Source of the DNA: Rebecca billardiae RCC1528
Lineage: Eukaryota > Protista > Haptophyta
DNA: 64,000 nucleotides
Reading direction: 5' to 3'
Assembly: GCA_965240325.2 (NCBI GenBank)
Contig: OZ251247.1
Span: 1,114,869 to 1,178,868, forward strand
Below, in pieces: positions 21,629-62,759 of the stretch (within the stretch, counting starts at the first letter, position 1; every line of letters begins with the position of its first letter). A program made the translations under genes and the position numbers. The notes beneath the pieces were generated by a model, which searched no databases, was not told the DNA's origin, and saw only the letters and a list, made by a program, of their open reading frames with translations.

Positions 21629-22246
21629 TCACTGCAAGGCGACACTTTGCGGGCCCGTGCTGACAGTGCCACGCGCCACAGACAGTGCTTCCACACAGCA
21701 GCGCAGCAGCACACAGCAGCGGGCGGTGCGCACCCACCTCGCCCACGCGGCCGCGTAGTCGGCCGCGAGCTCGAGCGCGGTCGCCTCCGCGTCCACCGGC
21801 TCGAGCGAGCCCCCCGCCGCCGCATCCTCAACACCGCCCCCCCCCGCCCTCCGCGCCCTCCGCGCCGCCGCCCCCCGCGTGTGCGTGTGCGCCGAGCAGC
21901 GCGCCGATCGCCGCGTACGGACAGCGCTCCACGAGCAGGGCGCGCGCGGGGCGCCACGCGCTGCACTCAACGAGGTGGCGGCTGCGGGGGCGCGTGGCGC
22001 GCGGGGTGTGGGTGTCCGGGCGGAGGGGCACGCGCGCGCTCGGTTGGCAGGCGGCCGCGCGCTGCTGAGCTGCCGCAGCCGCGCGAGGCGCGGCGCGGCT
22101 GAGGCAGAGGCGGCGGCGCGGCGCGCTCGCGCGGCTCGCCTGATGGCTGCGTGCGCGGTGCCGTGCGGCGCGAGGGCCTCGGACTGCGCGCCGTGCCACT
22201 GGATGTTGCGCGCCGAGCGCGGCTGCACCGGCGGCAGCTCCGCCCA

Positions 22247-22279
<33 letters not shown>

Positions 22280-24419
22280 CAGCCCGCGCGGCGCCGCGTG
22301 CGTGAGTGCGCGCGCCCTGTTGGCGCCCGCCCAGTGGCGCAGCACCGCGTGCGGCGTGGCGGTGGACTCCGCGACGATGGCGAGCGCGCGGTGCTCGCAC
22401 CCGCGCGTCCGCCCGCCCTGCCGCCCCGCGATGCGCACCATCGGCGCATGCCGAGCACCGTCGCCCTCTCCGGATGCTGCCGGCGGCGGCCCCACCTTGC
22501 GGCCGACGGCGGCAGAGCCATGGCCGCACGCGTGCACGCGGCCGTCGGCCGTCACGTACAGCGCGTGGCTGTGCGAGAGCGCACACGCGGCCACGCGCTG
22601 CCCGCCCAGCAGCGCCACGCGCACCGGCACGCTGGCGTCTGCCGACGCTGGGCGACCGAGCTGCGCGCACCAGTTGTTCCCGAACGTGTGCACGCTGCCG
22701 TCTACGCCCAGCACCGCGCTGCCATGAGGCCCAGCGCTGGCACTCACAGCGCGCACGCCGCCGAGTGCGGTGATGGGCGTAGGCAGGAGCTGCCCGCGTG
22801 TAGAGCCATGGCCGAGCTGTCCGGAAGAGCCCCGCCCGAACGAGTGCACACGCCCCACCGTGTCCACCACCAGGCTGTGCTGTAAGCCAGCGCTCACGTG
22901 CACGGTGCGCACGCCCACGAGCGCCTCGACGCGCCTCGGCGTGTGCTGATCCTGCTCGTCGCCGTGGCCGAGCTGGCCGCAGTAGCCGTGGCCGCACGAG
23001 TAGACGGCGCCACTGATGGAGAGCAGCAGCGTGTGGTACATGCCCGCGGCGATGCCACCAACGCGCACGCCGCCCAGCGCCTCGATGCGCGTCGGCTCCC
23101 ACCGGTCCTTCGTGTCGCCGTGTCCGCAAGGCTGGGCGTGTGTGACGCGTCATGACGTGACGTAACGTCATGACGTCATGACGTGACGCGAGGAATGGCG
23201 TAACGTGACGCCCGGACAGCGCTCTGCCCACGCCTGGCACACCCGGACCGTCACAGTAGTGCCACAGGCGGCTACGCGCGCGCGCGCCACGGCCGGGCGG
23301 CGCGCCGCGCAGTGCTTGGACGGGCAGCGGTGCAGCGCCCACGGCGATAGCTCGTGGATCCTCCAGCTCCACGGCCACATGGGTGCGGGAGCGGGGGCCC
23401 TCGCCTTTGGGCGACGAGCCCACTGCTGTGCCGCACTGACTAACTAGATACGGGAAGGGAACCCCGAATTAAGGCCCGAAACGTCATAACTCGTTTTAAT
23501 ATCATCAATATTACAAGAATACATACGTAACGGACGAAACGGTACCCGCCAAAAGACGTGTTGCTATGACGCGTAAATTACGCGTAAAACGCGTTACGTC
23601 ATGACGTGACGCTGGAAATGGGCGTCATGACGCGTCATAGCCCACCCCTGCGTGTCCGAGCTGGCCGCACTCGTTGAGGCCCAAGCTGTACGCGCAGCCT
23701 GCGGCCGCAGTGAGCGCGAGGCTGTGGTAGGCGCCGGCGGCGATGCCCACGACCGGCTCGCAATGGAACCCCTCAATCTGGGCGAAAGCGGACCGAGCCT
23801 TTCCGTCGCCTGGCCCCAGCTGCCCGCACGCGTTCTTGCCGCAGCCATACACGGCGCCGGCCTCGCTCAGCGCGAGCAGGTGGGCTTCGCCAGCCGCCAC
23901 CGCGACCACGCGCACCGCAGAGAGCGAGGCGACGTGCGTCGGCGTGTGCATCGGCTCGATGCGATCGTCACCGTGCCCCAGCGCACAAGGCGCGCGAGGA
24001 GGGCGCCACGGCCGCTCTTCCACGCCGCACGTGTGCAGCCCGCCCTCCGCGTCCACGAACGCGCTCACCGCTTCGAAATCCCCGTAAAGGGCACTGTAGC
24101 CACCACAAGCCACCACCTGCGCGTGCGCACGCGCGAGCTGGAGGACGTGCTCGCGCGCAAGTAGCTCATCCGTCCACGTGCACGACGACGCGGGCAGCGC
24201 CTCGGGCAGCGCGTGCTCGTGGCCGCGCGCGCGCGCGCGCTCGCGCAGCACACGCTCGACCGGTGCGCTGGCGCGGCCGGGCGCGCCGCGGAAGAGGCGC
24301 GAGGCGGCGTTGGCGCTCGCGAGATCTTGCGCGGCGGGGAGCCAGGCGAGGATGCGCTCGATCAGCTCCGGCGCCACGTCGGCGAGCGTGAGCCGCGGCA
24401 ATGCAGCGGCGCTTGCCAT
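21629..24419 (-). pseudogene. F-box + RCC1-repeat gene A1, interrupted by a hAT-like MITE; unique C-terminal extension
   Basis: MASAAALPRLTLADVAPELIERILAWLP from ATG 24419. Removing 23127-23650 plus one TSD copy restores GQLGHG|DTKDRWEPTRIE. The 3' end differs from all other A copies after ..MVRIAG. Confidence 0.85.
23127..23650. mobile_element. hAT-like MITE, 524 bp
   Basis: 8-bp TSD CGTGTCCG (23119-23126, 23651-23658); imperfect TIRs CAAGGCTGGGC..TGACGCGTCATGACG / CAGGGGTGGGC..TGACGCGTCATGACG; subterminal CGTCATGACG palindromes. Confidence 0.85.
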
Positions 24420-24617
24420 CTCGACCGCCGTCCCTCCGCCACCGTCGCTCACGCCTTGGCTTGGCCGCCACCCCACTGGAGCGGCGCGGCTGCCCCACTG
24501 GCCGTGGCCATTCACTGGCCAAACGGTCTTCGTCCGTCCAGTTGAACACCCCGGACCGAGCAGGCCCGCCGCCGAGGCGGAGGGAGCCACCGCGCGCGAG
24601 AGAAGCGCCGCCGCGTG

Positions 24618-26084
24618 ATGGCATCACGCCCCGCGACAGACGCCACGATCGGCGCGCTGCCGCCCGAGCTGCTCGCGCGCGTGCTTGGCTTTCTCGAGCG
24701 CGCGCGCGATCTGGCCGCCGCGAACGCCGCCTCGCGCCTCTTCCGCGGCGCGCCGGGTGAGCGCTCGGCGGTCGAGCACGCGCTGCGCGAGCGCGCGCGC
24801 GCACGCGGGCACGAGCGCGCGTTGCCCGATCTGCTGCCCGCGGCGTCGTGCACGTGGACTGAGGAGCTGTTCGCACGCGACCGCGTGGCGACGATCGCCG
24901 CCGCGCACGCCAACGTTCTCGCGTGCGCGGGAAACCTCCGGAGCCGCTGGAGCGCGTTTGTGGACGCGGAGGGCGCGCTGCACACGTGCGGCGAGGAGGA
25001 GGTGCGCGCGATGGGCGCGCTTCGCGCGCCGGCAGCACTTGGGCATCCCGCATTGGCCACCGTGCCGATATGCACGCCCCAGCGCGTCGCCTCGCTCAGC
25101 GCGGTGCGCGTGGTCGCTGTGGCGGCTGGCTGGGCCCACCTGCTCGCGCTGAGCGATGCTGGCGCCGTGTACGGCTGCGGCGAGAACATCTGCGGCCAGC
25201 TCGGGCTGGGCGGCAGAACGAGCCGGTGCCCCTTCGCTTCGATTGCAGTACCTCGCGGCGCGCTGGTCGTGGGCATCGCCGCCGGCTTCAAGCACAGCCT
25301 CGCGCTCACCGCTGCTGGCTGTGCGTACAGCTGGGGCTACAACTTCGAAGGCCAGCTCGGCCACGGCGACAGGAAGGACCGGTGGGAGCCGACGCGCATC
25401 GAGGCGCTGGACGGCGTGCGCGTTGGCGGGGTGACCGCGGGCGGATGGCACACGCTGCTGCTCTCCACCAGTGGCGCCGTGCACTCGTGCGGCAATGGCT
25501 ACTTCGGCCAGCTCGGCCACGGCGACCAGCAGCATCAGCGCACGCCGAGGCGCATCGAGGCGCTCGCGGGCGTGCGCGCCGTGCACGTGAGCGCGGGCGA
25601 GGCGCACAGCCTGGTGGTGGACGCGGGTGGGCGCGTGCACTCGTTCGGGAGTGGCGCTTTCGGCCAACTCGGCACCGGCTCCGAGGACAATCAGCACACG
25701 CCGAGGCGCATCGAGGCGCTCGCGGGCGCCTGCGCAGTGCGCGCCCGCGCGGGCAGCACCTGCAGCTCGGTGCTCGGCGCGGACGGCAGCGTGCACGTCT
25801 TCGGGCACACGAATCACCCGCAACTCGGCCTGGGAGGGCCGACGGGGCCGCCTGCGCGCGTGCCCGAGCTCGCGCTCGCCCGCGTGCTCGACTGCGCGCT
25901 CGCAGATTCCCACTCGCTCTTTGCGACCGCAGACGGTGGCGTGTACGCGTGCGGCGAGCCGTCCGCAGCGCTCGGCCTCGGCCAGAGGCTGAGTCACACA
26001 GCCGTCGGCAACCGTCGACGCTGCACGCCGCTGGAGCGGGTCGCGTCGCTGCCGCGCGTGCTGCCGTGGTTCCCGCCGGGATGA
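24618..26084 (+). CDS. F-box + RCC1-repeat protein B1
   Basis: IGALPPELLARVLGFLERARDLAAANAASRLF (F-box), then about 7 RCC1 blades (AGxxHxLxLxxxGxVYxxGxNxxGQLG); intronless. Confidence 0.92.
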   Translation: MASRPATDATIGALPPELLARVLGFLERARDLAAANAASRLFRGAPGERSAVEHALRERARARGHERALPDLLPAASCTWTEELFARDRVATIAAAHANVLACAGNLRSRWSAFVDAEGALHTCGEEEVRAMGALRAPAALGHPALATVPICTPQRVASLSAVRVVAVAAGWAHLLALSDAGAVYGCGENICGQLGLGGRTSRCPFASIAVPRGALVVGIAAGFKHSLALTAAGCAYSWGYNFEGQLGHGDRKDRWEPTRIEALDGVRVGGVTAGGWHTLLLSTSGAVHSCGNGYFGQLGHGDQQHQRTPRRIEALAGVRAVHVSAGEAHSLVVDAGGRVHSFGSGAFGQLGTGSEDNQHTPRRIEALAGACAVRARAGSTCSSVLGADGSVHVFGHTNHPQLGLGGPTGPPARVPELALARVLDCALADSHSLFATADGGVYACGEPSAALGLGQRLSHTAVGNRRRCTPLERVASLPRVLPWFPPG

Positions 26085-26527: not shown

Positions 26528-28045
26528 TTAGCCAGGCAAGCCGCCACCGTCATCATCGCCGCGCACGGGCACGCGAGGCAGCCCCGCGATGCGCACCATC
26601 GGCGCGTGCCGAGCACCGTCGCCCTCTCCGGATGCTGCCGGCGGCGGCCCCACCTTGCGGCCGACGGCGGCAGAGCCATGGCAGCACGCGTGCACACGGC
26701 AGTCGGCCGTCACGTACAGCGCGTGGCTGTGTGAGAGCGCACAGGCGGCCACGCGCTGCCCGCCCAGCAGCTCCACACGCACCGGCACGCTGGCGTCTGC
26801 CGACGCTGGGCGGCCGAGCTGCGCGTACCGGTTCTCCCCGAACGTGTGCACGCTGCCGTCAGCACCCAGCACCGCGCTGCCGTAAGGCCCCGCGCTGGCA
26901 CTCACAGCGCGTACGCCGCCGAGTGCGGCGATGGGCGTAGGCAGGAGCTGCCCGCGTGTAGAGCCATGGCCGAGCTGGCCGTGCGGGCCGTCGCCAAACG
27001 AGGACACAGTGCCCCGGGCGTCCACAACCAGGCTGTGCATTTGGCCCGCGCTCACGTGCACGGCGCGCACGCCTGCAAGCGCCTCGATGCACCTCGGCGT
27101 GTGCTGACCCTGCCGGTCGCAGTGGCCGAGCCGGCCGCCGCTGCCAAATCCGCACGAGTAGACGTCACCATCGGTCGAGAGCAGCAGCGTGTGAGCATAC
27201 CCTGCGGACACCCCGCCCACGCGCACGCCGTCCAGCGCCTCGATGCGCGTCGGCTTCCACCGGAACTTCGTGTCGCCGTGGCCGAGCTGCCCAAAGTAGT
27301 TGAAGCCCCAGCTGTACACACAGCCAGCAGCGGTGAGCGCCAGGCTGTGCTCGCCGCCAGCGGCGATGCCCACGACCAGCGCGTCACGAGGTACTGCGAT
27401 CGAAGTGAAGGAGGGCCGAGCCTCTCCGTCGCCCAGGCCGAGCTGGCCACAGAAGTTCTCGCCGCAGCCGTGCACGGCGCCGGCATCGCTCAGAGCGAGC
27501 AGGTGGTGGCAGCCAGCGGCCACCGCGACCACGCGCACCGCAGAGAGCGAGGCGACGCGCGTGGGCGTGTGCATCGGCTCAAGGCGTCCATCGCCATGCC
27601 CCAGCGCAATGGCTGCCCGACGAGAGACACCTGGTCGCTCTTCCACGCCGCACGTGTGGAGCCCGCCCTCCGCGTCCACGAACGCGCTCATCACTTCAAA
27701 CTCAAAGTTGTCAGCTACGTTATTGCCACCGCAAGCCACCACCTGCGCGTGCACACGCACGAGCTGGAGGACGTGCTCGCGCACGAGCAGCTCGCCGATC
27801 CACGTGCGCGACGCCGCGGGCAGAGCCTCGGGCAGCGCGCGCTCGTGCCCGCGCGCGCGCGCGCGCTCGCGCAGCGCGCGCTCGACCGGCGAGCTGGCGC
27901 GGCCGGGCGCGCCGCGGAAGAGGCGCGAGGCGGCGTTGGCGCTCGCGAGGTCTTGCGCGGCGGGGAGCCAGGCGAGGATGCGCTCGATCAGCTCCGGCGC
28001 CACGTCGGCGAGCGTGAGCCGCGGCAATGCAGCGGCGCTTGCCAT
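26528..28045 (-). CDS. F-box + RCC1-repeat protein A2
   Basis: ATG 28045; F-box LADVAPELIERILAWL..DLASANAASRLF; RCC1 repeats. Confidence 0.92.
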   Translation of the reverse strand: MASAAALPRLTLADVAPELIERILAWLPAAQDLASANAASRLFRGAPGRASSPVERALRERARARGHERALPEALPAASRTWIGELLVREHVLQLVRVHAQVVACGGNNVADNFEFEVMSAFVDAEGGLHTCGVEERPGVSRRAAIALGHGDGRLEPMHTPTRVASLSAVRVVAVAAGCHHLLALSDAGAVHGCGENFCGQLGLGDGEARPSFTSIAVPRDALVVGIAAGGEHSLALTAAGCVYSWGFNYFGQLGHGDTKFRWKPTRIEALDGVRVGGVSAGYAHTLLLSTDGDVYSCGFGSGGRLGHCDRQGQHTPRCIEALAGVRAVHVSAGQMHSLVVDARGTVSSFGDGPHGQLGHGSTRGQLLPTPIAALGGVRAVSASAGPYGSAVLGADGSVHTFGENRYAQLGRPASADASVPVRVELLGGQRVAACALSHSHALYVTADCRVHACCHGSAAVGRKVGPPPAASGEGDGARHAPMVRIAGLPRVPVRGDDDGGGLPG

Positions 28046-28226: not shown

Positions 28227-29714
28227 ATGGCATCACCCCCCGCGACAGACGCCACGATCGGCGCGCTGCCGCCCGAGCTGCTCGCGCGCGTGCTCGGCTT
28301 TCTCGAGCGCGCGCGCGATCTGGCCGCCGCGAACGCCGCCTCGCGCCTCTTCCGCGGCGCGCCGGGTGAGCGCTCGGCGGTCGAGCACGCGCTGCGCGAG
28401 CGCGCGCGCGCACGCGGGCACGAGCACGCGCTGCCCGAGGCGCTGCCCGCGGCGTCGTGCACGTGGATTGAAGAGCTCCTCGCACGCGGCCGCGTGGCGA
28501 CGATTGCCGCCGCGCACTCCAGCGTGCTCGCGTGCGCGTCCGGCATCGGCACTCGCTGGAGCGCGTTTGTGGACGCGGAGGGCGCGCTGCACACGTGCGG
28601 CGAGGAGCAGGAGTACTTCACAGGCGAGCCCCTCGCGCTGGCGGTACTTGGGCATCCCACATTGGCCACCGAGCCGGTGTGCACGCCCCAGCGTGTCGCC
28701 TCGCTCGGTTCGGTGCGCGTGGTCGCGGTGGCGGGTGGAGGTGACCACCTGCTCGCGCTGAGCGATGCCGGCGCCGTGTACGGCTGCGGCAAGAACGGGC
28801 GCGGCCAGCTCGGGCTGGGCGGCACTGCGACGCGTTGGTCGTTCGAAACGATTAGCTCTTTTCGCGACGAGCTCGTCTTGCACATCTGTGCCGGCTACTG
28901 GCTCAGCCTCGCGCTCACCGCCGCTGGGTGTGCGTACAGCTGGGGTGACAACAACAGCGGCCAGCTCGGCCACGGCGACACGAAGGACCGGTGGGAGCCG
29001 ACGCGCATCGAGGCGCTGGACGGCGTGCGCGTCGGCGGCATCGCCGCGGGTGGAAGTCACACGCTGCTGCTCTCCACCAGTGGCGCCGTGCACTCGTGCG
29101 GCGCGGGCTACTGCGGCCGGCTCGGCCACGGCGACGAGGAGGATCAGCTCACGCCGAGGCGCATCGAGGCGCTCGCTGGCGTGCGCGCCGTGCACGTGAG
29201 CGTGGGCGAGGCGCACAGCCTGGTGGTGGACGCGGTGGGGCGCGTGCACTCGTTCGGATGGGGCTATTCCGGCCAACTCGGCACCGGCTCCAAGCACGAC
29301 CAGCATACGCCGAGGCGCATCGAGGCGCTCGCGGGCGTCTGCGCCGTGCTCGCCTGCGCCGGCGACAACAGAAGTGCGATGCTCAGCGCGGACGGCAGCG
29401 TGCACGTCTTCGGGCGCACGAATCACCCGCATCTCGGCCTGGGAGGGCCGACGGGGCCGCCCGCGCGCGTGCCCGAGCTCGCGCACGCCCAAGTGCTCGA
29501 CTGCGCGCTCGCAGATTCCCACTCGCTCTTTGCGACCGCCGACGGTGGCGTGTACGCGTGCGGCGAGCAGTCCGCAGCGCTCGGCCTCGGCCAGAGGCAG
29601 AGTCACACAGCCGCCGGCAACCGTCGACGCTGCACGCCGCTGGAGCGAGTCGCGTCACGCTGCCGCGCGTGCTGCCGTGGTCCCCGATGGGATGAGCAGC
29701 GATGGTCTACCTAG
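28227..29714 (+). CDS. F-box + RCC1-repeat protein B2 (2-nt insertion near 29657 alters the C-terminal tail)
   Basis: Same architecture as B1; gtcgcgtcACgctgccg versus gtcgcgtcgctgccg in sibling copies. Confidence 0.9.
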   Translation: MASPPATDATIGALPPELLARVLGFLERARDLAAANAASRLFRGAPGERSAVEHALRERARARGHEHALPEALPAASCTWIEELLARGRVATIAAAHSSVLACASGIGTRWSAFVDAEGALHTCGEEQEYFTGEPLALAVLGHPTLATEPVCTPQRVASLGSVRVVAVAGGGDHLLALSDAGAVYGCGKNGRGQLGLGGTATRWSFETISSFRDELVLHICAGYWLSLALTAAGCAYSWGDNNSGQLGHGDTKDRWEPTRIEALDGVRVGGIAAGGSHTLLLSTSGAVHSCGAGYCGRLGHGDEEDQLTPRRIEALAGVRAVHVSVGEAHSLVVDAVGRVHSFGWGYSGQLGTGSKHDQHTPRRIEALAGVCAVLACAGDNRSAMLSADGSVHVFGRTNHPHLGLGGPTGPPARVPELAHAQVLDCALADSHSLFATADGGVYACGEQSAALGLGQRQSHTAAGNRRRCTPLERVASRCRACCRGPRWDEQRWST

Positions 29715-34660: not shown

Positions 34661-34665
34661 GCCAG

Positions 34666-35986
34666 CTCGGCGGTCGAGCACGCGCTGCGCGAGCGCGCTC
34701 GCGCACGCGGCCACGAGCACGCGTTGCCCGAGGCGCTTCCCGCGGCGTCGTGCACTTGGACAGAGGAGCTCTTCGCACGTGATCGCGTGGCGACGATCGC
34801 CGCCGCGCACGCCAGCGTTCTCACGTGCGCGTGCGGCATCAGCAGTCGCTGGAGCGCGTTTGTGGACGCGGAGGGCGCGCTGCACACGTGCGGCGAAGGG
34901 GCCGAGAGCATGATTGCCACGCCCCGCGCGCTGGCGGTACTCGGGCATCCCGCATCGGCCACCCAGCCGGTATGCACGCCCCAGCGCGTCGCCTCGCTCT
35001 GTGCGGTGCGCGTGCGCGCCGTGGCAGCTGGCTCCTTCTACATGCTTGCGCTGAGCGATGCCGGCGCCGTGTACGGCTGCGGCGAGAACGGGCGCGGCCA
35101 GCTCGGGCTGGGCGACAGGAAGGAGCGTCGGTGGTTGGACGCGATCGACGCCCTGCGTGGCGAGCTCGTGGTGCACATCTGTACCGGTGCAGTCCACAGC
35201 CTCGCGCTCACGGCAGCTGGCTGTGCGTACAGCTGGGGCTGGAACTACTACGGCCAGCTCGGCCACGGCGACACGAAGGACCGGTGGGAGCCGACGCGCA
35301 TCGAGGCGCTGGACGGCGTGCGCGTGGGCGGCATCGCCGATGGCAAATACCACACGTTGCTGCTCTCAGCCAGTGGCGCCGTCTACTCGTGTGGCTTCAG
35401 TTACTTCGGCCAGCTCGGTCACGGCGACCAGCAGCATCAGCGCACGCCGAGGCGCATCGAGGCGCTCGCGGGCGTGCGCGCCGTGCACGTGAGCGCGGGC
35501 GAGGCGCACAGCCTGGTGGTGGACGCGGGTGGGCGCGTGCACTCGTTCGGGTGTGGCGCTTCCGGCCGACTCGGCGCCGACTCCGAGAACGATCAGCTTA
35601 CGCCGAGGCGCATCGAGGCGCTCAGGGGCGTGCACACAGTGCGTGCCCGCGCGGGCGACAGCTGCAGTGCGGTGCTCGGCGCAGACGGCAGCGTGCACGT
35701 CTTCGGACGCACGAATCACCTGCAGCTCGGCCTGGACGGGCCGACGGGGCAGCCCACGCGCGTGCCCGAGCTCGCGCTCGCCCGCGTGCTCGACTGCGCG
35801 CTCGCAGATTCCCACTCGCTCTTTGCGACCGCAGACGGTGGCATGTATGCGTGCGGCGAGCCGTCCGCAGCGCTCGGCCTCGGCCAGAGGCAGAGTCACA
35901 CAGCCGCCGGCAACCGTCGACGCTGCACGCCGCTGGAGCGAGTCGCGTCGCTGCCGCGCGTGCTGCCGTGGTCCCCGATGGGATGA
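34666..35986 (+). pseudogene. RCC1-repeat gene B3, 5'-truncated (no ATG or F-box)
   Basis: Similarity to B genes begins at SAVEHALRERARARG; the propeller frame is intact to the stop at 35986. Confidence 0.85.
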
Positions 35987-43667: not shown

Positions 43668-45161
43668 TCAGTCGCCGCGCACGGGCACGCGAGGCAGCTC
43701 CGCGATGCGCACCGTCGGCGCGTGCCGAGCACCGTCGCCCTCTCCGGATGCTGCCGGCGGCAGCCCCACCTTGCGGCCGACGGCGGCAGAGCCATGGCCG
43801 CACGCGTGCACGCGGCCGTCGGCCGTCACGTACAGCGCGTGGCTGTCCGACAGCGCACAGGCGGCCACTCGCTGCCCGCCCAGCAGCTCCACGCGCACCG
43901 GCACGCTGGCGTCTGCCGACGCTGGGCGGCCGAGCTGCGCGTATCGGTTCCACCCAAACGTGTGCACGCTGCCGTCGGCGCCCAGCACCGCGCCGCCAAA
44001 AGGCCCCGCGCTGGCACTCACAGCGCGCACGCCGCCGAGTGTGGCGATGGGCGTAGGCAGGAGCTGCCCGCGTGTAGAGCCATAGCCGAGCTGTCCGAAC
44101 TGGCCGTCGCCAAACGAGAACGCACCGCCCCGCACGTCCACCACCAGGCTGTGGCGGTTGCCCGCGCTCACGTGCACGGCGCGCACGCCAGCCAGCGCCT
44201 CGATGCGCCTCGGCGTGAGCTGATGCTCCTGGTCGCAGTGGCCGAGCTGGCCAAAGTAGCCGAAGCCACACGAATAGACGGTGCCACTGGCTGAGAGCAG
44301 TAGCGTGTGGTATTCGCCCGCGGCGATGCCACCCACGCGCACGCCATTCAGCGCCTCGATGCGCGTCGGCTCCAACCGCTCCTTCGTGTCGCCGTGGCCG
44401 AGCTGGCCCCAGTCGTTGCTGCCCCAGCTGTACGCACACCCAGCGGCGGTGAGCGCGAGGCTGTGCTTGAAGCTGGCGGCGATGCCCACGACCAGCGCAC
44501 CACGAGGTACTGCGATCAAAGCGAAGGAGAATCGAGCCTTGCCGTCTCCCAGCCCCAGCTGGCCACTGTAGTTGGCGCCGCAGCCGTACACAGCGCCGGC
44601 ATCGCTCAGCGCGAGCAGGTGGTGGGTGCCAGCGGCCACCGCGACCACGCGCACACCGCTGAGGGAGGCGACGCGCGTCGGAGCGTGCATCGGCTCGAGG
44701 CGATCATCGCCGTGCCCCAGCGCAATGTGCGCGCGAGGAGGGCTCCACGGCCGCTCTTCCACGCCGCACGTGTGCAGCCCGCCCTCCGCGTCCACAAACG
44801 CGCTCACCGCGTCGAAACCCCCGTGAAAAACACTGTAGCCACCACCAGCCACCACCACCAGCCCGTGCGCACGCGCGAGCTGGAGGACGTGCTCGCGCGC
44901 GAGCAGCTCCCCGATCCAAGTGAACGACGCCGCGGGCAGCGTCCCGGGCAGCGCACGCTCGTGCCCGCGAGCGCGCGCGCGCTCAAGCAGCGCGCGCTCG
45001 ACCGGCGAGCTGGCGCGGCCGGGCGCGCCGCGGAAGAGGCGCGAGGCGGCGTTGGCGCTCGCGAGGTCTTGCGCGGCGGGGAGCCAGGCGAGGATGCGCT
45101 CGATCAGCTCCGGCGCCACGTCGGCGAGCGAGAGCCGCGGCAACGCAGCGGCGCTTGCCAT
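43668..45161 (-). CDS. F-box + RCC1-repeat protein A6 (1-nt insertion shortens the tail)
   Basis: ATG 45161; ends PVRGD* instead of PVRGDDDGGGLPG*. Confidence 0.9.
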   Translation of the reverse strand: MASAAALPRLSLADVAPELIERILAWLPAAQDLASANAASRLFRGAPGRASSPVERALLERARARGHERALPGTLPAASFTWIGELLAREHVLQLARAHGLVVVAGGGYSVFHGGFDAVSAFVDAEGGLHTCGVEERPWSPPRAHIALGHGDDRLEPMHAPTRVASLSGVRVVAVAAGTHHLLALSDAGAVYGCGANYSGQLGLGDGKARFSFALIAVPRGALVVGIAASFKHSLALTAAGCAYSWGSNDWGQLGHGDTKERLEPTRIEALNGVRVGGIAAGEYHTLLLSASGTVYSCGFGYFGQLGHCDQEHQLTPRRIEALAGVRAVHVSAGNRHSLVVDVRGGAFSFGDGQFGQLGYGSTRGQLLPTPIATLGGVRAVSASAGPFGGAVLGADGSVHTFGWNRYAQLGRPASADASVPVRVELLGGQRVAACALSDSHALYVTADGRVHACGHGSAAVGRKVGLPPAASGEGDGARHAPTVRIAELPRVPVRGD

Positions 45162-45336
45162 CTCGACCCCGTCCCTCCGCCACCGTCGCTCACGCCTTGG
45201 CTTGGCCGCCACCCCACTGGAGCGGCGCGGCCACTGGCCAAACGGTCTTCGTCCGTCCAGTTGAACACCCCGGACCGAGCAGGCCCGCCGCCGAGGCGGA
45301 GGGAGCCACCGCGCGCGAGAGAAGCGCCGCCGCGTG

Positions 45337-46800
45337 ATGGCATCACGCCCCGCGACAGACGCCACGATCGGCGCGCTGCCGCCCGAGCTGCTCGCGCGGG
45401 TGCTCGGCTTCGTGGAGCGCGCGCACGATCTGGCCGCCGCGAACGCCGCCTCGCGCCTCTTCCGCGGCGCGCCCGGCGAGCGCTCGGCGGTCGAGCACGC
45501 GCTGCGCGAGCGCGCGCGCGCACGCGGGCACGAGCGCGCGTTGCCCGATCTGCTGCCCGCGGCGTCGTGCACGTGGACTCAGGAGCTGTTCGCACGCGAC
45601 CGCGTGGCGACGATCGCCGCCGCGCACGCCAACGTTCTCGCGTGCGCGGGAAACCTCCGGAGCCGCTGGAGCGCGTTTGTGGACGCGGAGGGCGCGCTGC
45701 ACACGTGCGGCGAGGAGGAGGTGCGCACGATGGGCGAGCCTCGCGCGCCCGAAGCACTGGGGCATCCGACATTGGCCACCGTGCCGATATGCACGCCCCA
45801 GCGCGTTGCCTCGCTCCGCGCGGTGCGCGTGGTCGCGGTGGCCGCTGGCTGTGACCACCTGCTAGCGCTGAGTGCGGCCGGCGCCGTGTACGGCTGCGGC
45901 GGCAACTACCGCGGCGAGCTCGGGCTGGGCGACACTGGGACGCGTTACTCGTTCGAAGTGATCGCCGCCCTCAGCGGTGAGCTCGTCGTGCACATCTGTG
46001 CCGGCGCCTGGCACAGCCTCGCGCTCACCGCCGCTGGGTGTGCGTACAGCTGGGGCAGCAACAGCTGCGGCCAGCTCGGCCACGGCGACACGGAGGAGCG
46101 GCGGGAGCCGACGCGCATCGAGGCGCTGGGCGGCGTGCGCGTTGGCGGCATCGCCGCGGGCATGTACCACACGCTACTGCTCTCAACCAGCGGCGCTGTC
46201 CACTCGTGCGGCAATGGCTACAACGGCCTGCTCGGTCACGGTGACGAGCAGCATCAGCGCACGCCGAGGCGCATCGAGGCGCTCGTGGGCGTGCGCGCCG
46301 TGCACGTGAGCGCGGCCTACGCGCACAGCCTGGTGGTGGACGCAGCTGGGCGCGTGCACTCGTTTGGGAGTGACGCTTTCGGCCAACTCGGCATCGGATG
46401 GGCGGCGCCTCGGCGCACGCCGAGGCGCATCGAGGCGCTCGCGGGCACCCGCGCCGTGCGCGCCCGCTCGCGCAACAACTGCAGCGCGGTGCTCGGGGCG
46501 GACGGCAGCGTGCACGTCTTCGGGCACACGAATCACCCGCAGCTCGGCCTGGAAGGGCAGGCTGGGCTGCCTGAGCGCGTGCCCGAGCTCGCGCACGCCC
46601 GCGTGCTCGACTGCGCGCTCGCAGATTCCCACTCGCTCTTTGCGACCGCCGACGGTGGCGTGTACGCGTGCGGCGAGCCGTGCGCAGCGCTCGGCCTCGG
46701 CCAGAGGCTGAGTCGTGCAGCCGTCGGCAACCGACGCTGCACGCCGCCGGAGCGAGTCGCGTCGCTGCCGCGCGTGCTGCCGTGGTTCCCGACGGGATGA
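45337..46800 (+). CDS. F-box + RCC1-repeat protein B6
   Basis: Intact ORF from ATG 45337. Confidence 0.92.
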   Translation: MASRPATDATIGALPPELLARVLGFVERAHDLAAANAASRLFRGAPGERSAVEHALRERARARGHERALPDLLPAASCTWTQELFARDRVATIAAAHANVLACAGNLRSRWSAFVDAEGALHTCGEEEVRTMGEPRAPEALGHPTLATVPICTPQRVASLRAVRVVAVAAGCDHLLALSAAGAVYGCGGNYRGELGLGDTGTRYSFEVIAALSGELVVHICAGAWHSLALTAAGCAYSWGSNSCGQLGHGDTEERREPTRIEALGGVRVGGIAAGMYHTLLLSTSGAVHSCGNGYNGLLGHGDEQHQRTPRRIEALVGVRAVHVSAAYAHSLVVDAAGRVHSFGSDAFGQLGIGWAAPRRTPRRIEALAGTRAVRARSRNNCSAVLGADGSVHVFGHTNHPQLGLEGQAGLPERVPELAHARVLDCALADSHSLFATADGGVYACGEPCAALGLGQRLSRAAVGNRRCTPPERVASLPRVLPWFPTG

Positions 46801-47273: not shown

Positions 47274-48788
47274 TTAGCCAGGCAAGCCACCACCGTCATC
47301 ATCGCCGCGGACGGGCACGCGAGGCAGCCCCGCGATGCGCACCATCGGCGCGTGCCGAGCACCGTCGCCCTCTCCGGATGCTGCCGGCGGCGGCCCCACC
47401 TTGCGGCCGACGGCGGCAGAGCCATGGCCGCACGCGTGCACGCGGCCGTCGGCCGTCACGTACAGCGCGTGGCTGTCCGAGAGCGCACAGGCGGCCACGC
47501 GCTGCCCGCCCAGCAGCGCCACGCGCCACGGCACGCGGACGTCTGCCGACGCTGGGCGGCCGAGCTGCGCGTACCGGTTCTCCCCGAACGTGTGCACGCT
47601 GCCGTCGGCACCCAGCACCGCGCTGCCATCAGGCCCCGCGCTGGCACTCACAGCGCGCACGCCGCCGAGTGTGGCGATGGGCGTAGGCAGGAGCTGCCAG
47701 CGTGTAGAGCCATGGCCGAGCTCTCCAGACCAGCCGTCACCGAACGAGGACGCAGTGCCCCGCGCGTCCACCACCAGGCTGTGGCGGTTACCCGCGCTCA
47801 CGTGCACGGCGCGCACGCCAGCGAGCGCCTCGATGCGCCTCGGCGTGCGCTGATCCTGAACGTCGCCGTGGCCGAGCCGGCCATCGTAGCCCCAGCCAAA
47901 CGAGTAGACTGCACCATTGCACGAGAGCAGCAGCGTGTGCGCATATCCAGCCGACATCCCACCCACGCCCACGCCGCCCAGCACCTCGATGCGCGTCGGC
48001 TCCCACTGGTCCTTCGTGTCGCCGTGGCCGAGCTGGCCGTGGCTGTTGGCGCCCCAGCTGTACGCGCAGCCCGCGGCGGTGAGCGCGAGGCTGTGGTGGG
48101 CGCCAGCGGCGATGCCCACGACCAGCACGTCACGACGTACTGCGATCGAAGCGAAGGAAGACCGAGCCTTCCCGTCTCCAAGCCCGAGCTGGCCGCAGTA
48201 GTTCCGGCCGCAGCCGTACACGGCGCCGGCCTCGCTCAGCGCGAGCAGGTGGGCTTCGCCAGCCGCCACCGCGACCACGCGCACCGCAGAGAGCGAGGCG
48301 ACGTGCGTCGGAGCGTGCATCGGCTCGAGGTGATCATCGCCGTGCCCCAGCGCGAAGGGCGCCCGAAGAGGGGTCAGCAGCGTCTCTTCCACGCCGCACG
48401 TGTGGAGCCCGCCCTCCGCGTCCACAAACGCGCTCATCACTTCGAAATCCCCGTAAAGGGCACTGTAGCCACCACAAGCCACCACCTGCGCGTGCGCACG
48501 CGCGAGCTGGAGGACGTGCTCGCGTCCGAGCAGCTCCCCGATCCACGTGCACGACGACGCGGGCAGCGCCTCGGGCAGCGCGCGCTCGTGCCCGCGCGCG
48601 CGCGCGCGCTCGCGCAGCACGCGCTCGACCGGCGAGCTGGCGCGGCCGGGCGCGCCGCGGAAGAGGCGCGAGGCGGCGTTGGCGCTTGCGAGGTCTTGCG
48701 CGGCGGGGAGCCAGGCGAGGATGCGCTCGATCAGCTCCGGCGCCACGTCGGCGAGCGTGAGCCGCGGCAATGCAGCGGCGCTTGCCAT
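47274..48788 (-). CDS. F-box + RCC1-repeat protein A7
   Basis: Intact ORF from ATG 48788. Confidence 0.92.
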   Translation of the reverse strand: MASAAALPRLTLADVAPELIERILAWLPAAQDLASANAASRLFRGAPGRASSPVERVLRERARARGHERALPEALPASSCTWIGELLGREHVLQLARAHAQVVACGGYSALYGDFEVMSAFVDAEGGLHTCGVEETLLTPLRAPFALGHGDDHLEPMHAPTHVASLSAVRVVAVAAGEAHLLALSEAGAVYGCGRNYCGQLGLGDGKARSSFASIAVRRDVLVVGIAAGAHHSLALTAAGCAYSWGANSHGQLGHGDTKDQWEPTRIEVLGGVGVGGMSAGYAHTLLLSCNGAVYSFGWGYDGRLGHGDVQDQRTPRRIEALAGVRAVHVSAGNRHSLVVDARGTASSFGDGWSGELGHGSTRWQLLPTPIATLGGVRAVSASAGPDGSAVLGADGSVHTFGENRYAQLGRPASADVRVPWRVALLGGQRVAACALSDSHALYVTADGRVHACGHGSAAVGRKVGPPPAASGEGDGARHAPMVRIAGLPRVPVRGDDDGGGLPG

Positions 48789-48876
48789 CTCGACGCCGTC
48801 CCTCCGCCACCGTACCTCACGCCTTGGCTTGGCCGCCACCCCACTGGAGCGGCGCGGCCACTGGCCGTGGCCAAAC

Positions 48877-50007
48877 CAAGGGTAGTAAGGGTGAGCAACT
48901 CCGCTGGCGACAGCCGCGGAGGTCGGTCGGGCTCTGTTTGCCTCGGCGCCCGGTGCGAGCGGAGCGGAGCGAGTACTATCAGCGGCGGAGGGCGCTGAGG
49001 CCGCGCACGGCGTGAGGCGCGGCGTCGGCTGAGTCGGTCTGCGGAGGATGCGCGGCGCTCGGCCCGCTGCGCAGCAGCAGTGTGCCTCACTTTGCCCCGA
49101 GCGCCGTCCTCCGCGTCGCCTCCTTCCCGCCTTGGAGCAGCACGCATGTGCGCGCCGCCACCTCGAAGGCGGCACGGGCTTGCTCAGACGACCGCGCGCG
49201 TGTGGCGCGCGACTCGGTCGACTGCGCGCGCGCGCTGCCGCGGTGCAAGGTAGCGCCGTCGCATGCGCGCGCCGTGCCAGCGCGTGCCTTTGCTTACGGC
49301 CATCTCATGAGTGTAGTGCTCGTTTGTCTGCTTGCTCTCACGAATGGTTCGCTGTGCCTCACGCCAGCGCTCGTCGGTCGATCAGCGAGGTGTTGAGTGA
49401 CATTGGATACCCATGACGAAGGCCTAGCCGTGTGTATCCCTTCTCAGCACGAATGCAAGCGGACGCTATGGCTCCGCATCGATGGTACCAACACTCACGC
49501 CGCTGTCTTTTCCAGCTTCACGTCACTCGGCACTAGTCGGATGCGCAAGCAGCATTAGACATGTGTGTGAGCTCGCACTCACGTCCACGCACACGCTCTC
49601 GCAAGGCCTCGGCGCGCGTATGCGGTGGCGCTACCTTGCACCGCGGCAGCGCGCGCGCGCAGTCGACCGAGTCGCGCGCCACACGCGCGCGGTCGTCTGA
49701 GCAAGCCCGTGCCGCCTTCGAGGTGGCGGCGCGCACATGCGTGCTGCTCCAAGGCGGGAAGGAGGCGACGCGGAGGACGGCGCTCGGGGCAAAGTGAGGC
49801 ACACTGCTGCTGCGCAGCGGGCCGAGCGCCGCGCATCCTCCGCAGACCGACTCGGCCGACGCCGCGCCTCACGCCGAGCGCGGCCTCGCCGCCCTCCGCC
49901 GCTGATAGTACTCGCTCCGCTCCGCTCGCACCGGGCGCCGAGGCAAACAGAGCCCTCCCGACCTCCGTGGCTGTCGCCAGCGGAGTTGCGCACCCTTACT
50001 ACCCTTG
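48877..50007. mobile_element. Non-autonomous long-TIR (foldback) DNA transposon, P-superfamily-like, 1131 bp, inserted in the A7/B7 promoter
   Basis: Termini CAAGGGTAGTAAGGGTG...CACCCTTACTACCCTTG; ~400-bp arms; 7-bp TSD GCCAAAC (48870-48876, 50008-50014). The empty site tggccaaacggtc is seen in sibling promoters. Confidence 0.92.
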
Positions 50008-50107
50008 GCCAAACGGTCTTCGTCCGTCCAGTTGAACACCCCGGACCGAGCAGGCCCGCCGCCGAGGCGGAGGGAGCCACCGCGCGCGAGAGAAGCGCCG
50101 CCGCGTC

Positions 50108-51553
50108 ATGGCATCACGCCCCGCGACAGACGCCACGATCGGCGCGCTGCCGCCCGAGCTGCTCGCGCGCGTGCTTGGCTTTCTCGAGCGCGCGCGCGAT
50201 CTGGCCGCCGCGAACGCCGCCTCGCGCCTCTTCCGCGGCGCGCCGGGTGAGCGCTCGGCGGTCGAGCACGCGCTGCGCGAGCGCGCGCGCGCACGCGGGC
50301 ACGAGCGCGCGTTGCCCGATCTGCTGCCCGCGGCGTCGTGCACGTGGACTGAGGAGCTGTTCGCCCGCGACCGCGTGGCGACGATCGCCGCCGCGCACGC
50401 CAGCGTGCTCGCCTGCGCGGGAATCCACCGGAGCCGCTGGAGTGCGTTTGTGGACGCGGACGGCGCGCTGCACACGTGCGGCGAGGAGGAGGAGCTCACG
50501 ACGGGCGAGCCTCGCGCGCCCGAAGCACTGGGGCATCATGCATTGGCCACCGTGCCGATATGCACGCCCCAGCGCGTTGCCTCGCTCTGCGCGGTGCGCG
50601 TGGTCGCGGTGGCCGCTGGCTACGACCACCTGCTTGCGCTGAGCGATGCCGGCGCCGTGTACGGCTGCGGCTTCAACCAGTACGGCCAGCTCGGGGTGGG
50701 CGACACTGTGACGCGTTACTCGTTCGAAGCGATCGCCGCCCTCAGCGGCGAGCTCGTGGTGCACATCTGTGCCGGCTACTGGCACGGCCTCGCGCTCACC
50801 GCCGCTGGGTGTGCGTTCAGCTGGGGCAGCAACAGCGTCGGCCAGCTCGGCCACGGCGATAAGAAGAAGCGGCGGGAGCCGACGCGCATCGAGGCGCTGG
50901 ACGGCGTGCGCGTGGGCGGCATCGCCGCGGGCGAATACCACACGCTACTGCTCTCAGCCAGTGGTGCCGTCTACTCGTGCGGCTGTGGCTACTCGGGCGA
51001 GCTCGGCCACGGCGACACGGAGCATCAGCTCACGCCCAAGCGTGCCGAGGCGCTCGCCGGCGTGCGCGCGGTGCACATGAGCGCAGGGAGCGGGCACGGT
51101 CTCGTGGTGGACTCCGCTGGGCGCGTGCACGCCCTCGGGACCCGCCAGCTGGCAGACGAGTCCGAAGAGTTGCAGCTGCTGCCCAGGCGCGTCGAGGCGC
51201 TGGCGGGCGTGCGCGCCGTGCGCGCCCGTGCTGGCCACAGCAGCAGCGCGGTGCTGGGTGCGGACGGCAGCTTGCACGTGCGCGGGGAGACCGAGGTGGA
51301 CCAGTTTGACGGGGTGGGTCTTTCCCAGCCAGCGATCGCAGAGCAGCTGCGGCACGAGCGTGTCGTCGACTGCGCATTCAGCCACTCGCACGCGCTGTTT
51401 GTGACGGCCGACGGCGCGGTGCACGCGTGCGGCCGGCGCTCGGCAGCGCTGGGCAGCGGCGTCAAGCTGGGCCGCTACGGGCTTGCACAGCAGGAGGGGC
51501 TCGCGCCCATGCACGACGGCGATGCCGAGTGGTCGTCTGACAGTGACGATTGA
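50108..51553 (+). CDS. F-box + RCC1-repeat protein B7 (divergent C-terminal third)
   Basis: Intact 481-aa ORF; the last blades (DCAFSHSHALFVTADGAVHACG) differ from B1-B6. Confidence 0.9.
   Translation: MASRPATDATIGALPPELLARVLGFLERARDLAAANAASRLFRGAPGERSAVEHALRERARARGHERALPDLLPAASCTWTEELFARDRVATIAAAHASVLACAGIHRSRWSAFVDADGALHTCGEEEELTTGEPRAPEALGHHALATVPICTPQRVASLCAVRVVAVAAGYDHLLALSDAGAVYGCGFNQYGQLGVGDTVTRYSFEAIAALSGELVVHICAGYWHGLALTAAGCAFSWGSNSVGQLGHGDKKKRREPTRIEALDGVRVGGIAAGEYHTLLLSASGAVYSCGCGYSGELGHGDTEHQLTPKRAEALAGVRAVHMSAGSGHGLVVDSAGRVHALGTRQLADESEELQLLPRRVEALAGVRAVRARAGHSSSAVLGADGSLHVRGETEVDQFDGVGLSQPAIAEQLRHERVVDCAFSHSHALFVTADGAVHACGRRSAALGSGVKLGRYGLAQQEGLAPMHDGDAEWSSDSDD

Positions 51554-62702: not shown

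Positions 62703-62759
<57 letters not shown>

What the first reader, a model, noticed from the sequence alone, without database searches (positions are those of the whole stretch)
21629..51553. Subtelomeric array of 7 head-to-head F-box/RCC1 gene pairs with CDR-like hypervariable loops: candidate diversified recognition-and-degradation system
Seen: 14 paralogues (A1-A7 minus, B1-B7 plus) in ~3.6-kb units (B starts 24618/28227 and 38141/41733/45337). The F-box, scaffold and intergenic DNA are almost invariant, while two loops per blade change in almost every copy. Blade motif SWGxNxxGQ reads YNFE, FNYF, DNNS, RNSC, WNYY, SNDW, DNAL, YNCS, YNSR, SNSC, ANSH, SNSV. Motif AGxxH reads WA, CH, GD, IH, TH, DD, YH, CA, CD, EA, YD; the next blade reads FK, GE, YW, AY, AV, AW, AC, AH. 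A length-variable loop follows VACGG in A copies. The variable residues are rich in Y/W/F/S/N/G/R. Known: F-box proteins are SCF (Skp1-Cul1) substrate adaptors, and in RCC1-type propellers such as UVR8 (GWRHT motifs) and BLIP-II these loops form the ligand-binding face. Inference: this is a repertoire of ubiquitin-ligase adaptors under diversifying selection, for example against viral or parasite proteins or for self/non-self recognition. It would be analogous to nematode and plant F-box expansions but built on an RCC1 scaffold; I do not know of such a system described in algae.
Basis: partly seen in the sequence, partly recalled or inferred. Interest (0 to 1): 0.92.

Follow-up and report, generated by a model that had tools for sequence, protein, structure and literature searches.

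The report
Hypervariable F-box/RCC1 propeller gene array
Next to a chromosome end of a very GC-rich alga lie seven head-to-head pairs of genes for propeller-shaped proteins, probably ubiquitin-ligase adaptors; their framework stays constant while a few residues on one binding face change faster than neutral DNA, as expected of a recognition repertoire in an arms race.

Summary
Window 22.4-51.6 kb is a tandem array of seven ~3.6-kb units. Each unit is a head-to-head pair of intronless genes (A minus, B plus). Each protein has a divergent F-box-like N-terminus, a helical linker and a seven-bladed RCC1 propeller; the closest solved structure is UVR8. Eleven genes look intact. A1 and B3 are broken by transposon-like insertions, and A4 lost 10 F-box residues. 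The array ends 10.8 kb from TTAGGG telomere repeats.

Loop codons evolve 2.7-3.5 times faster than silent sites (cross-validated between A and B; bootstrap CI above 1). Site models find omega 4-8 in the blades but not in the F-box or the C-terminus. Silent changes are not raised beside variable codons. Segment trees conflict, which indicates gene conversion, including A-to-B exchange. Selected sites lie in loops of one propeller face, matching UVR8's Trp/Arg interface positions, and are four-fold enriched in aromatics.

Corrections: only the promoter spacer is invariant; S/G/R are not enriched; the F-box scores below threshold in these copies, though it is clear at family level.

SCF function, targets and expression remain untested. 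The scan already reported this family on other DNA of this genome. I found no paper describing it.

The parts
22420..24419 (-). A1: broken copy. It is interrupted by a 525-bp insertion (23127-23651), and its 3' end is cut by the array border.
24420..24617 (.). Head-to-head spacer of unit 1, a putative bidirectional promoter. The equivalent spacers are 28046-28226, 37959-38140, 41551-41732 and 45162-45336. Mean pairwise difference is 1.3%.
24618..26084 (+). B1: intact. It carries an A-type conversion tract at alignment codons ~200-230.
26528..28045 (-). A2: intact
28227..29714 (+). B2: intact propeller; altered and slightly longer C-terminal tail
30123..31640 (-). A3: intact
31706..34660 (.). 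2955-bp insertion with 391-bp terminal inverted repeats. It replaces ~268 bp of unit 3 (part of the spacer and the B3 5' end).
34665..35986 (+). B3: 5'-truncated copy. It lacks a start codon and the F-box; the propeller frame is open from 34724.
36471..37958 (-). A4: open frame with a 10-residue deletion in the F-box. It is a near-duplicate of A6 and carries a B-type tract at codons ~270-290.
38141..39604 (+). B4: intact. This is the copy that was modelled (AF2 pLDDT 89.8).
40033..41550 (-). A5: intact
41733..43196 (+). B5: intact
43668..45161 (-). A6: intact; C-terminus 8 residues shorter
45337..46800 (+). B6: intact
47274..48788 (-). A7: intact
48876..50008 (.). 1133-bp insertion with 399-bp terminal inverted repeats in the head-to-head spacer of unit 7
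50108..51553 (+). B7: intact, the most divergent copy. Its last ~100 residues differ and are partly A-like.
62346..64000 (+). TTAGGG telomere repeats (context only, not part of the system)

Best explanation
The array encodes a repertoire of substrate receptors for a cullin-type (SCF) ubiquitin ligase.

Proposed mechanism:
- The N-terminal F-box-like helices would dock on Skp1 (inferred).
- A long helix (residues ~80-97) holds a seven-bladed RCC1 propeller rigidly, as in Fbw7/Cdc4 (modelled).
- The propeller's top face, built from the B-C loops (AG-xx-H) and the D-A loops (G-x-N/G-xx-G), binds the target (inferred).

How the repertoire evolves:
- Tandem duplication next to the telomere multiplies the genes.
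- Gene conversion, including exchange between the inverted A and B genes, keeps promoter, F-box and scaffold alike and shuffles blade cassettes (shown).
- Positive selection keeps replacing the aromatic-rich contact residues (shown).
- Copies are also lost to transposon insertions and deletions, so the family turns over by birth and death (shown).

The targets are most likely fast-evolving foreign proteins, from viruses or intracellular parasites. Alternatively they are polymorphic self proteins. This last step is a guess.
For: RCC1 propeller. Pfam WD40_RLD scores 1e-69 and RCC1 6e-61. The AF2 model has pLDDT 89.8 and pTM 0.91, with seven four-stranded blades. UVR8 is the best match by sequence (5e-70) and by fold (TM 0.9 by target).

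F-box.
- A profile of 30 family N-termini hits F-box proteins in all 14 best places in the PDB, and the IRF3 chains only below them (E 1.2 and weaker): FBXO31 at 1.3e-4, then FBXO22, FBXO3, cyclin F, FBXW8, FBXW7, AnkB, FBH1, GID2 and MAX2.
- 23 of 30 family members hit PF12937, best 4e-8.
- For the modelled N-terminus, the top five fold matches are Fbw7 in Skp1 complexes.

Selection.
- Variable sites defined in A and scored in B give dN/dS(scaffold) 2.68 (CI 2.0-3.5). The reverse test gives 3.47 (CI 2.4-5.0).
- M1a versus M2a with segment-specific trees gives LRT 71.8, 72.8 and 21.0 for the three propeller segments (omega2 4.1-8.3). The LRT is 0 for the F-box/linker and 2.9 for the C-terminus.
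- 55-74% of codons have omega ~0.05-0.12, so the genes are functional.
- Non-coding 3' spacer divergence (0.17) equals silent divergence, so dS is not artificially low.

One face. Of 26 sites with P>0.9, 25 lie in B-C or D-A type loops or in the two insertion loops of blades 7/1. HMMER aligns the AG-xx-H pair to W233/R234 of UVR8's GWRHT motif. It aligns the G-x-G-xx-G sites to UVR8's GWG-W-G-RY-G aromatic positions.

Composition. Aromatics are 19.4% at selected sites against 4.8% elsewhere (p 5e-18).

Gene conversion. AU tests reject neighbouring segments' trees (p mostly below 1e-3). A4/A6 nest among B copies in the central segment. B1 carries an A-type tract.

Precedents. FBXO24 (F-box plus RCC1) co-precipitates SKP1, CUL1 and RBX1 (PMC10932545). 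Nematode F-box families show the same split between a conserved F-box and a selected substrate domain, and they sit on chromosome arms (PMC8120010). A separate E. huxleyi-type group of 16 homologues is hypervariable at the same positions (2.73 versus 0.34 bits, p 8e-8).
Against: - No copy in the window reaches Pfam's F-box cut-off: B 19-23 bits, A 13 bits with the canonical Leu-Pro replaced by Val-Ala, A4 none.
- The fold match of the N-terminus to F-box proteins is not significant on its own (best E 1.3).
- FBXO24 is not among the 30 best Swiss-Prot fold matches, so the fusion may be independent.
- No RNA run could be listed, so expression is unproven.
- Skp1 binding and the substrates are untested.
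- The one-face claim rests on strand topology and on the alignment to UVR8, not on measured coordinates.
- 12 of the 26 selected sites lie in length-variable loops, where alignment error can mimic selection.
- Recombination within segments can inflate the likelihood-ratio tests. The pairwise tests are not affected by this.
Confidence: 0.6

Rival explanations
1. The proteins are diversified binding proteins that do not work through SCF. On this reading the F-box-like helices are a decayed or re-used module. The propellers would act as stoichiometric binders or inhibitors, or as face-to-face dimers like UVR8, possibly A with B.
For: The F-box is below threshold in all copies and very weak in A (13 bits, Leu-Pro lost). 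A4 keeps an open frame without helix 2. The nearest structure, UVR8, dimerises through the very face that is variable here (the structural point is from my own knowledge). The genes come in strict A/B pairs on one conserved spacer.
Against: The N-terminal 100 codons are under purifying selection with no positively selected class. The domain is conserved across distant family members, which do pass F-box models. A decayed module would drift. A4's deletion is recent, because A4 and A6 are about 98% alike.
Confidence: 0.2
2. The proteins work as SCF adaptors, but the targets are the alga's own polymorphic proteins. The array would then serve mating or allorecognition, hybrid incompatibility or a selfish drive, rather than defence.
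For: Fast-evolving ubiquitin-ligase adaptor families are linked to hybrid incompatibility in Caenorhabditis (title and abstract of PMC12951971). Subtelomeric, rapidly turning-over paired genes also fit recognition loci. Nothing in the window points to a pathogen.
Against: There is no evidence either way. According to earlier scan notes (unchecked) the family is spread over many arrays in the genome, which fits a broad repertoire better than a single recognition locus.
Confidence: 0.12
3. The loops are simply unconstrained. Gene conversion homogenises the rest, so the pattern is neutral.
For: The same positions are the least conserved in RCC1 repeats in general (consensus of 50 homologues).
Against: Loop dN is 2.7-3.5 times silent and non-coding divergence, with bootstrap intervals above 1. 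Conversion tracts would homogenise neutral loop codons together with their neighbours, yet in the A/B-homogenised central region the loop codons keep pN 0.565 against pS 0.194. The strong aromatic bias is not a neutral outcome.
Confidence: 0.03
4. A targeted mutator (DGR-like or deaminase-like) writes changes into the loop codons.
For: Variable codons are sharply localised, and many differ at 2-3 bases.
Against: Clean silent differences are flat at 0.11-0.16 per codon at every distance from the variable codons. There is no spill-over into neighbouring codons. No template repeat or reverse transcriptase was seen in the units.
Confidence: 0.02
5. The array is an assembly artefact: a repeat that was expanded or stitched wrongly.
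For: The region is subtelomeric and repetitive. The one public run that could be laid holds only short fragments 90-95% alike, so there is no independent confirmation.
Against: The units differ by about 12% in DNA. Each has its own open frames, its own insertions and its own spacer indels. Artefactual copies would be near-identical.
Confidence: 0.02

Closest known systems
Fast-evolving F-box adaptor families of nematodes and plants (Thomas 2006 as cited in PMC8120010; FTH/FBA, FBA/kelch types)
   Same: They are large, tandemly clustered families on chromosome arms or ends. The F-box is under purifying selection and the substrate-binding domain under positive selection. They evolve by birth and death (one search compared).
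   Different: The recognition domain here is an RCC1 propeller, with selection focused on 2-5 loop residues per blade. The host is a haptophyte-type alga. The genes come as head-to-head A/B pairs. The F-box is much more divergent.
FBXO24 (mammalian F-box + RCC1 protein)
   Same: It has the same two-domain architecture. It is shown to associate with SKP1, CUL1 and RBX1 and to use both domains to bind its substrate MIWI (PMC10932545).
   Different: It is a single conserved gene, not a diversifying family. It is not among the 30 best Swiss-Prot fold matches of the model, so common origin of the fusion is unsupported.
UVR8 (plant UV-B receptor), the closest solved structure
   Same: It is a seven-bladed RCC1 fold (phmmer 5e-70; TM 0.9 by target). 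The variable positions here are the positions of UVR8's GWRHT Trp/Arg residues and its GWG-W aromatic residues on the interaction face.
   Different: UVR8 has no F-box. Its tryptophans are conserved chromophores, whereas here those positions are the most variable ones. No photoreceptor role is implied.
Fbw7 / Cdc4 (F-box - helical linker - WD40 propeller)
   Same: The order of parts is the same, and the propeller's top face would serve as the substrate site. These are the best, though weak, fold matches of the N-terminal 100 residues, aligned over 85-92 columns.
   Different: Their propeller is WD40 with eight blades, not RCC1. They are conserved single genes.
Fungal NLRs with hypervariable WD40/ANK/TPR repeats, and Ectocarpus LRR/TPR candidate receptors (PMC4986451 and PMC3341825, seen but not read; comparison from my own knowledge)
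   Same: Repeats are kept nearly identical by concerted evolution, with a few positively selected positions on the binding surface. They have been proposed as recognition repertoires in organisms without known adaptive immunity.
   Different: Their variable units are repeats within one gene, shuffled by repeat recombination and attached to NB-ARC/NACHT signalling domains. Here whole genes are the units and the effector module is an F-box.

Membership tests
RCC1-like domain proteins (PF00415 / PF25390) | Seven tandem RCC1 repeats folding into a seven-bladed propeller | tested here: met
   WD40_RLD 1e-69 and RCC1 6e-61. The AF2 model has seven four-stranded blades and pLDDT 89.8. Foldseek matches UVR8, HERC and RPGR RLDs at E 1e-35 to 1e-26.
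F-box proteins (SCF substrate receptors) | Recognisable F-box sequence motif at the N-terminus | tested here: inconclusive
   The window's copies are below Pfam's cut-off of 24.3 bits: B 19.4-22.8, A 12.6-13.1, A4 none. The family profile hits F-box proteins in all 14 best places in the PDB, with unrelated IRF3 chains only below them (best 1.3e-4). 23 of 30 homologues hit PF12937 (best 4e-8).
F-box proteins (SCF substrate receptors) | Three-helix F-box fold followed by a linker to the substrate-binding domain | tested here: inconclusive
   The model has helices 16-23, 29-38/40-43 and 51-62 plus a linker helix 80-98, with pLDDT 87. The top five Foldseek hits are Fbw7 in Skp1 complexes, and 12 of 25 hits are F-box proteins. 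The best E is 1.3 and TM about 0.43.
F-box proteins (SCF substrate receptors) | Binding to Skp1 and assembly into an SCF ligase | not testable with these tools
   No multimer prediction is available, and there is no access to this genome's Skp1.
Diversifying F-box adaptor repertoires (nematode/plant type) | [quoted passage not shown] | tested here: met
   M1a/M2a LRT is 0 for codons 0-100, and 71.8, 72.8 and 21.0 for the propeller segments. Cross-validated dN/dS is 2.7-3.5. The array is tandem and 10.8 kb from the telomere.
UVR8-type UV-B photoreceptors | Conserved tryptophans in three GWRHT motifs (W233, W285, W337) | tested here: not met
   The aligned positions are the hypervariable xx of AG-xx-H; for example ER, GW, MY and CA align to WR.
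Targeted-mutagenesis systems (DGR-like) | Mutations localised irrespective of coding effect, together with a template repeat and a reverse transcriptase | tested here: not met
   The silent-difference rate is flat with distance from the variable codons. No template-like repeat or RT-like ORF was seen in the units or insertions. ORFs of the insertions were not scanned against Pfam.

The most novel reading that the evidence does not exclude
Each head-to-head unit is a matched pair. The A and B propellers of a unit bind each other face to face, as UVR8 monomers do, through their co-diversifying hypervariable faces. On this reading the array is a set of lock-and-key cassettes, for allorecognition, mating compatibility or a toxin-antidote-like drive. 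One partner (B, with the better F-box) would send the other partner, or a mismatched partner, to degradation.
Probability: 0.06. Interest if true: 0.9.

Novelty: new variant of a known kind. Interest (0 to 1): 0.64.

Why it matters
Haptophytes are major marine primary producers, and their blooms are ended by giant viruses. Almost nothing is known about how they recognise intracellular invaders.

This family offers a concrete, testable candidate for an algal recognition system. It has a constant ligase-docking module and a propeller face that is rebuilt by selection. It is multiplied in subtelomeric arrays, and a second haptophyte lineage is variable at the same positions.

It would also show that the RCC1 propeller can serve as a diversifiable binding scaffold in the way LRR, WD40 or immunoglobulin folds do. 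That is of interest for protein engineering.

If the targets turn out to be self proteins, the arrays would instead mark compatibility or speciation loci in an ecologically important group.

Tried and rejected
- RNA evidence: no RNA run could be listed for the unit or for one gene. The single run found (X1, kind unknown) holds only 70-185-bp pieces, mostly 90-95% alike, with chimeric joints. It says nothing about expression, copy number or assembly. Read laying was given 5901 letters. No telomere letters were sent to any search tool.
- Viral relatives: the search for related loci with the 50-sequence alignment failed because no stretch was conserved enough. It was not repeated.
- Neighbourhood of the closest database relative (P0001, 51-52% identity to both A and B, from a 69% GC Logan contig): no paired RCC1 gene next to it.
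- Organism: the 73% GC D. lutheri assembly (PMC8379373) fits the composition. However, no database protein is closer than 52%, so I do not name the species.
- Literature: six searches gave no description of F-box/RCC1 arrays in algae. The 'RCC1' hits in phytoplankton papers are culture-collection strain numbers.
- Elevated pS inside the variable codons (0.32) looked like local hypermutation. It turned out to be a pathway-averaging effect, because same-amino-acid codon pairs show no excess.
- 3D mapping of the selected sites could not be done directly, because model coordinates are not exposed. I used strand topology and the UVR8 alignment instead.


Full report
**1. What is there**

The window is 70-83% GC and ends in about 1.65 kb of TTAGGG repeats starting at 62346. 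Between 22.4 and 51.6 kb, six-frame motif scans and ORF translations show 14 related genes in seven units.
- A copies lie on the minus strand, with Met at 24419, 28045, 31640, 37958, 41550, 45161 and 48788.
- B copies lie on the plus strand, with Met at 24618, 28227, 38141, 41733, 45337 and 50108. B3 has lost its start.
- Whole units are 87-88% identical in DNA, with a 3.59-3.61-kb period.
- tblastn finds no further copy elsewhere in the window.
- The last gene ends 10.8 kb from the telomere. An alpha/beta-hydrolase ORF lies in between.

Each gene is one uninterrupted ORF of about 487-505 codons.

**2. State of the copies**

Eleven genes look intact.
- A1 is cut by a 525-bp insertion and loses its 3' end at the array border.
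- B3 lost its start codon, its F-box and about 268 bp of spacer to a 2955-bp element with 391-bp terminal inverted repeats.
- A4 has an in-frame 10-residue deletion in the F-box region.
- A third inverted-repeat element (1133 bp) sits in the spacer of unit 7 without touching a coding region.

So the family turns over by duplication and loss.

**3. What the proteins are**

Propeller. Pfam gives WD40_RLD 1e-69 and RCC1 6e-61. An AlphaFold2 model of B4, built on 50 homologues, has pLDDT 89.8 and pTM 0.91 and shows seven four-stranded blades preceded by five helices. The nearest solved protein is UVR8, by sequence (5e-70) and by fold (TM 0.9 by target). HERC, RPGR and RCC2 propellers follow.

F-box. 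In the window's own proteins the N-terminus is only a sub-threshold F-box-like match. B copies score 19.4-22.8 bits and A copies about 13 bits, against a cut-off of 24.3. A4 scores nothing. At family level the case is good.
- A profile of 30 N-termini hits F-box proteins in all 14 best places in the PDB, and the IRF3 chains only below them (E 1.2 and weaker). FBXO31 leads at 1.3e-4, followed by FBXO22, FBXO3, cyclin F, FBXW8, FBXW7, AnkB, FBH1, GID2 and MAX2.
- 23 of 30 members hit PF12937, best 4e-8.
- A separate model of residues 1-100 (pLDDT 87) finds Fbw7 from Skp1 complexes in its first five places. These matches are not significant on their own (E 1.3).

I therefore treat the F-box as homologous but divergent, most degenerate in the A genes, where Leu-Pro has become Val-Ala. 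Skp1 binding could not be tested.

**4. The variation is real and localised**

The columns with five or more residues are the xx of AG-xx-H, the x and xx of G-x-N/G-xx-G, and two longer loops in the closing blade.

Nei-Gojobori counts give pN 0.40-0.52 at these codons. For the rest they give pN 0.06-0.10 and pS 0.13-0.19.

To avoid circularity I defined variable columns in one paralogue type and scored the other.
- Sites from A scored in B: dN(variable)/dS(rest) = 2.68, bootstrap 95% CI 2.00-3.54.
- Sites from B scored in A: 3.47, CI 2.36-5.02.
- No bootstrap replicate was at or below 1.

Silent divergence is not artificially low. The alignable non-coding tail-to-tail spacer differs by 0.17 on average.

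Clean silent differences, counted at codon pairs with the same amino acid, stay at 0.11-0.16 at every distance from a variable codon. This argues against a local mutator and for selection acting on amino-acid change.

**5. Site models**

I wrote a Goldman-Yang M0/M1a/M2a implementation (F3x4 frequencies, tree fixed per segment from IQ-TREE, global branch scale optimised). I ran it on five alignment segments so that each had its own tree.

| Alignment codons | Region | LRT M1a vs M2a | p | omega2 | Share of sites |
|---|---|---|---|---|---|
| 0-100 | F-box and linker | 0.0 | n.s. | - | - |
| 100-230 | propeller | 71.8 | 2.5e-16 | 4.1 | 19% |
| 230-330 | propeller | 72.8 | 1.5e-16 | 7.8 | 9% |
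| 330-430 | propeller | 21.0 | 2.7e-5 | 8.3 | 1.3% |
| 430-500 | C-terminus | 2.9 | n.s. | - | - |

In all segments 53-74% of codons have omega 0.05-0.12, so these are working genes. The two flanking segments serve as internal negative controls.

Caveats. Recombination within a segment can still inflate these tests. Also, 12 of the 26 sites with P>0.9 lie in the two length-variable loops, where alignment is less certain.

**6. Where the selected sites lie**

I mapped the 26 sites on the strands of the model.
- Four fall in loops between strands 2 and 3 of a blade (AG-xx-H).
- Eight fall in loops from strand 4 to strand 1 of the next blade (G-x-N-xx-G and the following GD-xxx).
- One (B4 residue 357) falls at the first residue of strand 1 of blade 5, at the end of such a loop.
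- Twelve fall in the insertion loops of blades 7/1.
- One falls in a loop between strands 1 and 2.

In a four-strand meander, the 2-3 and 4-1' loops emerge on the same face. This follows from established propeller topology. It is my inference here, because model coordinates are not exposed.

HMMER's alignment to UVR8 gives independent support. It places the AG-xx-H pair on W233/R234 of GWRHT. It places the G-x-G-xx-G sites on the GWG-W-G-RY-G aromatic positions. In UVR8 all of these line the dimer and partner-binding face (from my own knowledge of the UVR8 structures).

The selected sites are four-fold enriched in Tyr, Trp and Phe (19.4% against 4.8%, p 5e-18). Lys is also enriched. Ser, Gly and Arg are not. 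GC3 at these sites is 0.64 against 0.87 elsewhere.

**7. Homogenisation and shuffling**

The 181-198-bp head-to-head spacer differs by only 1.3% between units. That is ten times less than silent sites, as expected of a shared bidirectional promoter under constraint or frequent conversion.

Sliding-window comparison shows several conversion tracts.
- B1 has an A-type tract at codons ~200-230.
- A4/A6 have a B-type tract at ~270-290.
- B7 has A-like stretches near its C-terminus.
- A central region (codons ~230-320) no longer separates A from B.

AU tests reject the trees of neighbouring segments, mostly at p below 1e-3. In the central segment A4/A6 nest inside the B clade.

Even in that homogenised region the 11 loop codons keep pN 0.565 between A and B, against pS 0.194. 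Conversion therefore maintains the scaffold and moves blade cassettes between genes, including between the inverted partners, while selection keeps the contact residues different.

**8. Beyond the window**

The best database relative is only 51-52% identical to both A and B, which are about 60% identical to each other. It comes from a 69% GC contig without a paired neighbour.

Many homologues from marine assemblies, and at least one E. huxleyi protein, share the same N-terminal domain. A group of 16 E. huxleyi-type homologues (73% mean identity) is hypervariable at the same positions as the window's genes. Median entropy is 2.73 bits at the window's selected sites against 0.34 bits elsewhere (p 8e-8). 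So a constant scaffold with a variable face is a property of the family in at least two haptophyte-type lineages. I cannot tell whether those 16 are paralogues of one genome.

Earlier notes of this scan report the same family in many other arrays of this genome, three of them followed up with the same reading. I did not check those loci.

**9. Comparison with what is known**

- F-box plus RCC1 is a known architecture. FBXO24 has it and co-precipitates SKP1, CUL1 and RBX1 (PMC10932545).
- Rapidly diversifying F-box families with a conserved F-box and a selected substrate domain, located on chromosome arms, are known from nematodes and plants (PMC8120010).
- RCC1 propellers also serve other ligases. 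HERC and RCBTB proteins are among the fold matches.

Three things appear to be new. The diversifying surface is an RCC1 propeller. The variable genes come as strict head-to-head pairs next to a telomere. The host is a haptophyte-type alga. Six literature searches found no description of this. I therefore rate it a new variant of a known kind.

**10. Verdict**

Diversifying selection on one propeller face together with gene conversion is well supported. The SCF-adaptor mechanism is the best reading, at about 0.6, but it rests on divergent F-box homology. Expression, Skp1 binding and the targets are open.

Noticed in passing
window 23127-23651; 31706-34660; 48876-50008: Three insertions lie inside the array. 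They have long terminal inverted repeats (391 bp and 399 bp at 97-98% identity for the two larger ones) and short flanking duplications (GTGTCCG, CCAAA). All share a CAAGG(G/C)T-like end motif. Weak copies of one TIR occur at 13393-13530 and 14064-14217. They look like one family of non-autonomous foldback/MITE-like DNA transposons.
   Followed up: partly
window 24420-24617 and the equivalent spacers (e.g. 41551-41732): The head-to-head spacer is ten times more conserved (1.3% difference) than silent sites. It contains repeated CCACTGG-like words, whose number varies by small indels between units. It is a candidate bidirectional promoter element.
   Followed up: no
selected codons of all copies, window 24618-51553: GC3 is 0.64 at the positively selected codons against 0.87 in the rest of the propeller. 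This is consistent with recent substitutions that GC-biased conversion or codon bias has not yet reshaped.
   Followed up: no
window 54469-57858 (+): A long ORF with an alpha/beta-hydrolase domain (PF07859, 6e-29) lies in 82% GC, low-complexity sequence between the array and the telomere.
   Followed up: partly
window 14822-16723: A tandem repeat of period 437 bp, 4.3 copies, 93% matches. It overlaps the place where another note of this scan describes LRR cassettes.
   Followed up: no
window 36471-37958 and 43668-45161: A4 and A6 are near-duplicates (pN 0.013, pS 0.024), although they sit two units apart and their B partners are not duplicates. This points to a very recent conversion or duplication of the A gene alone. 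A4 then lost 30 bp of its F-box.
   Followed up: partly
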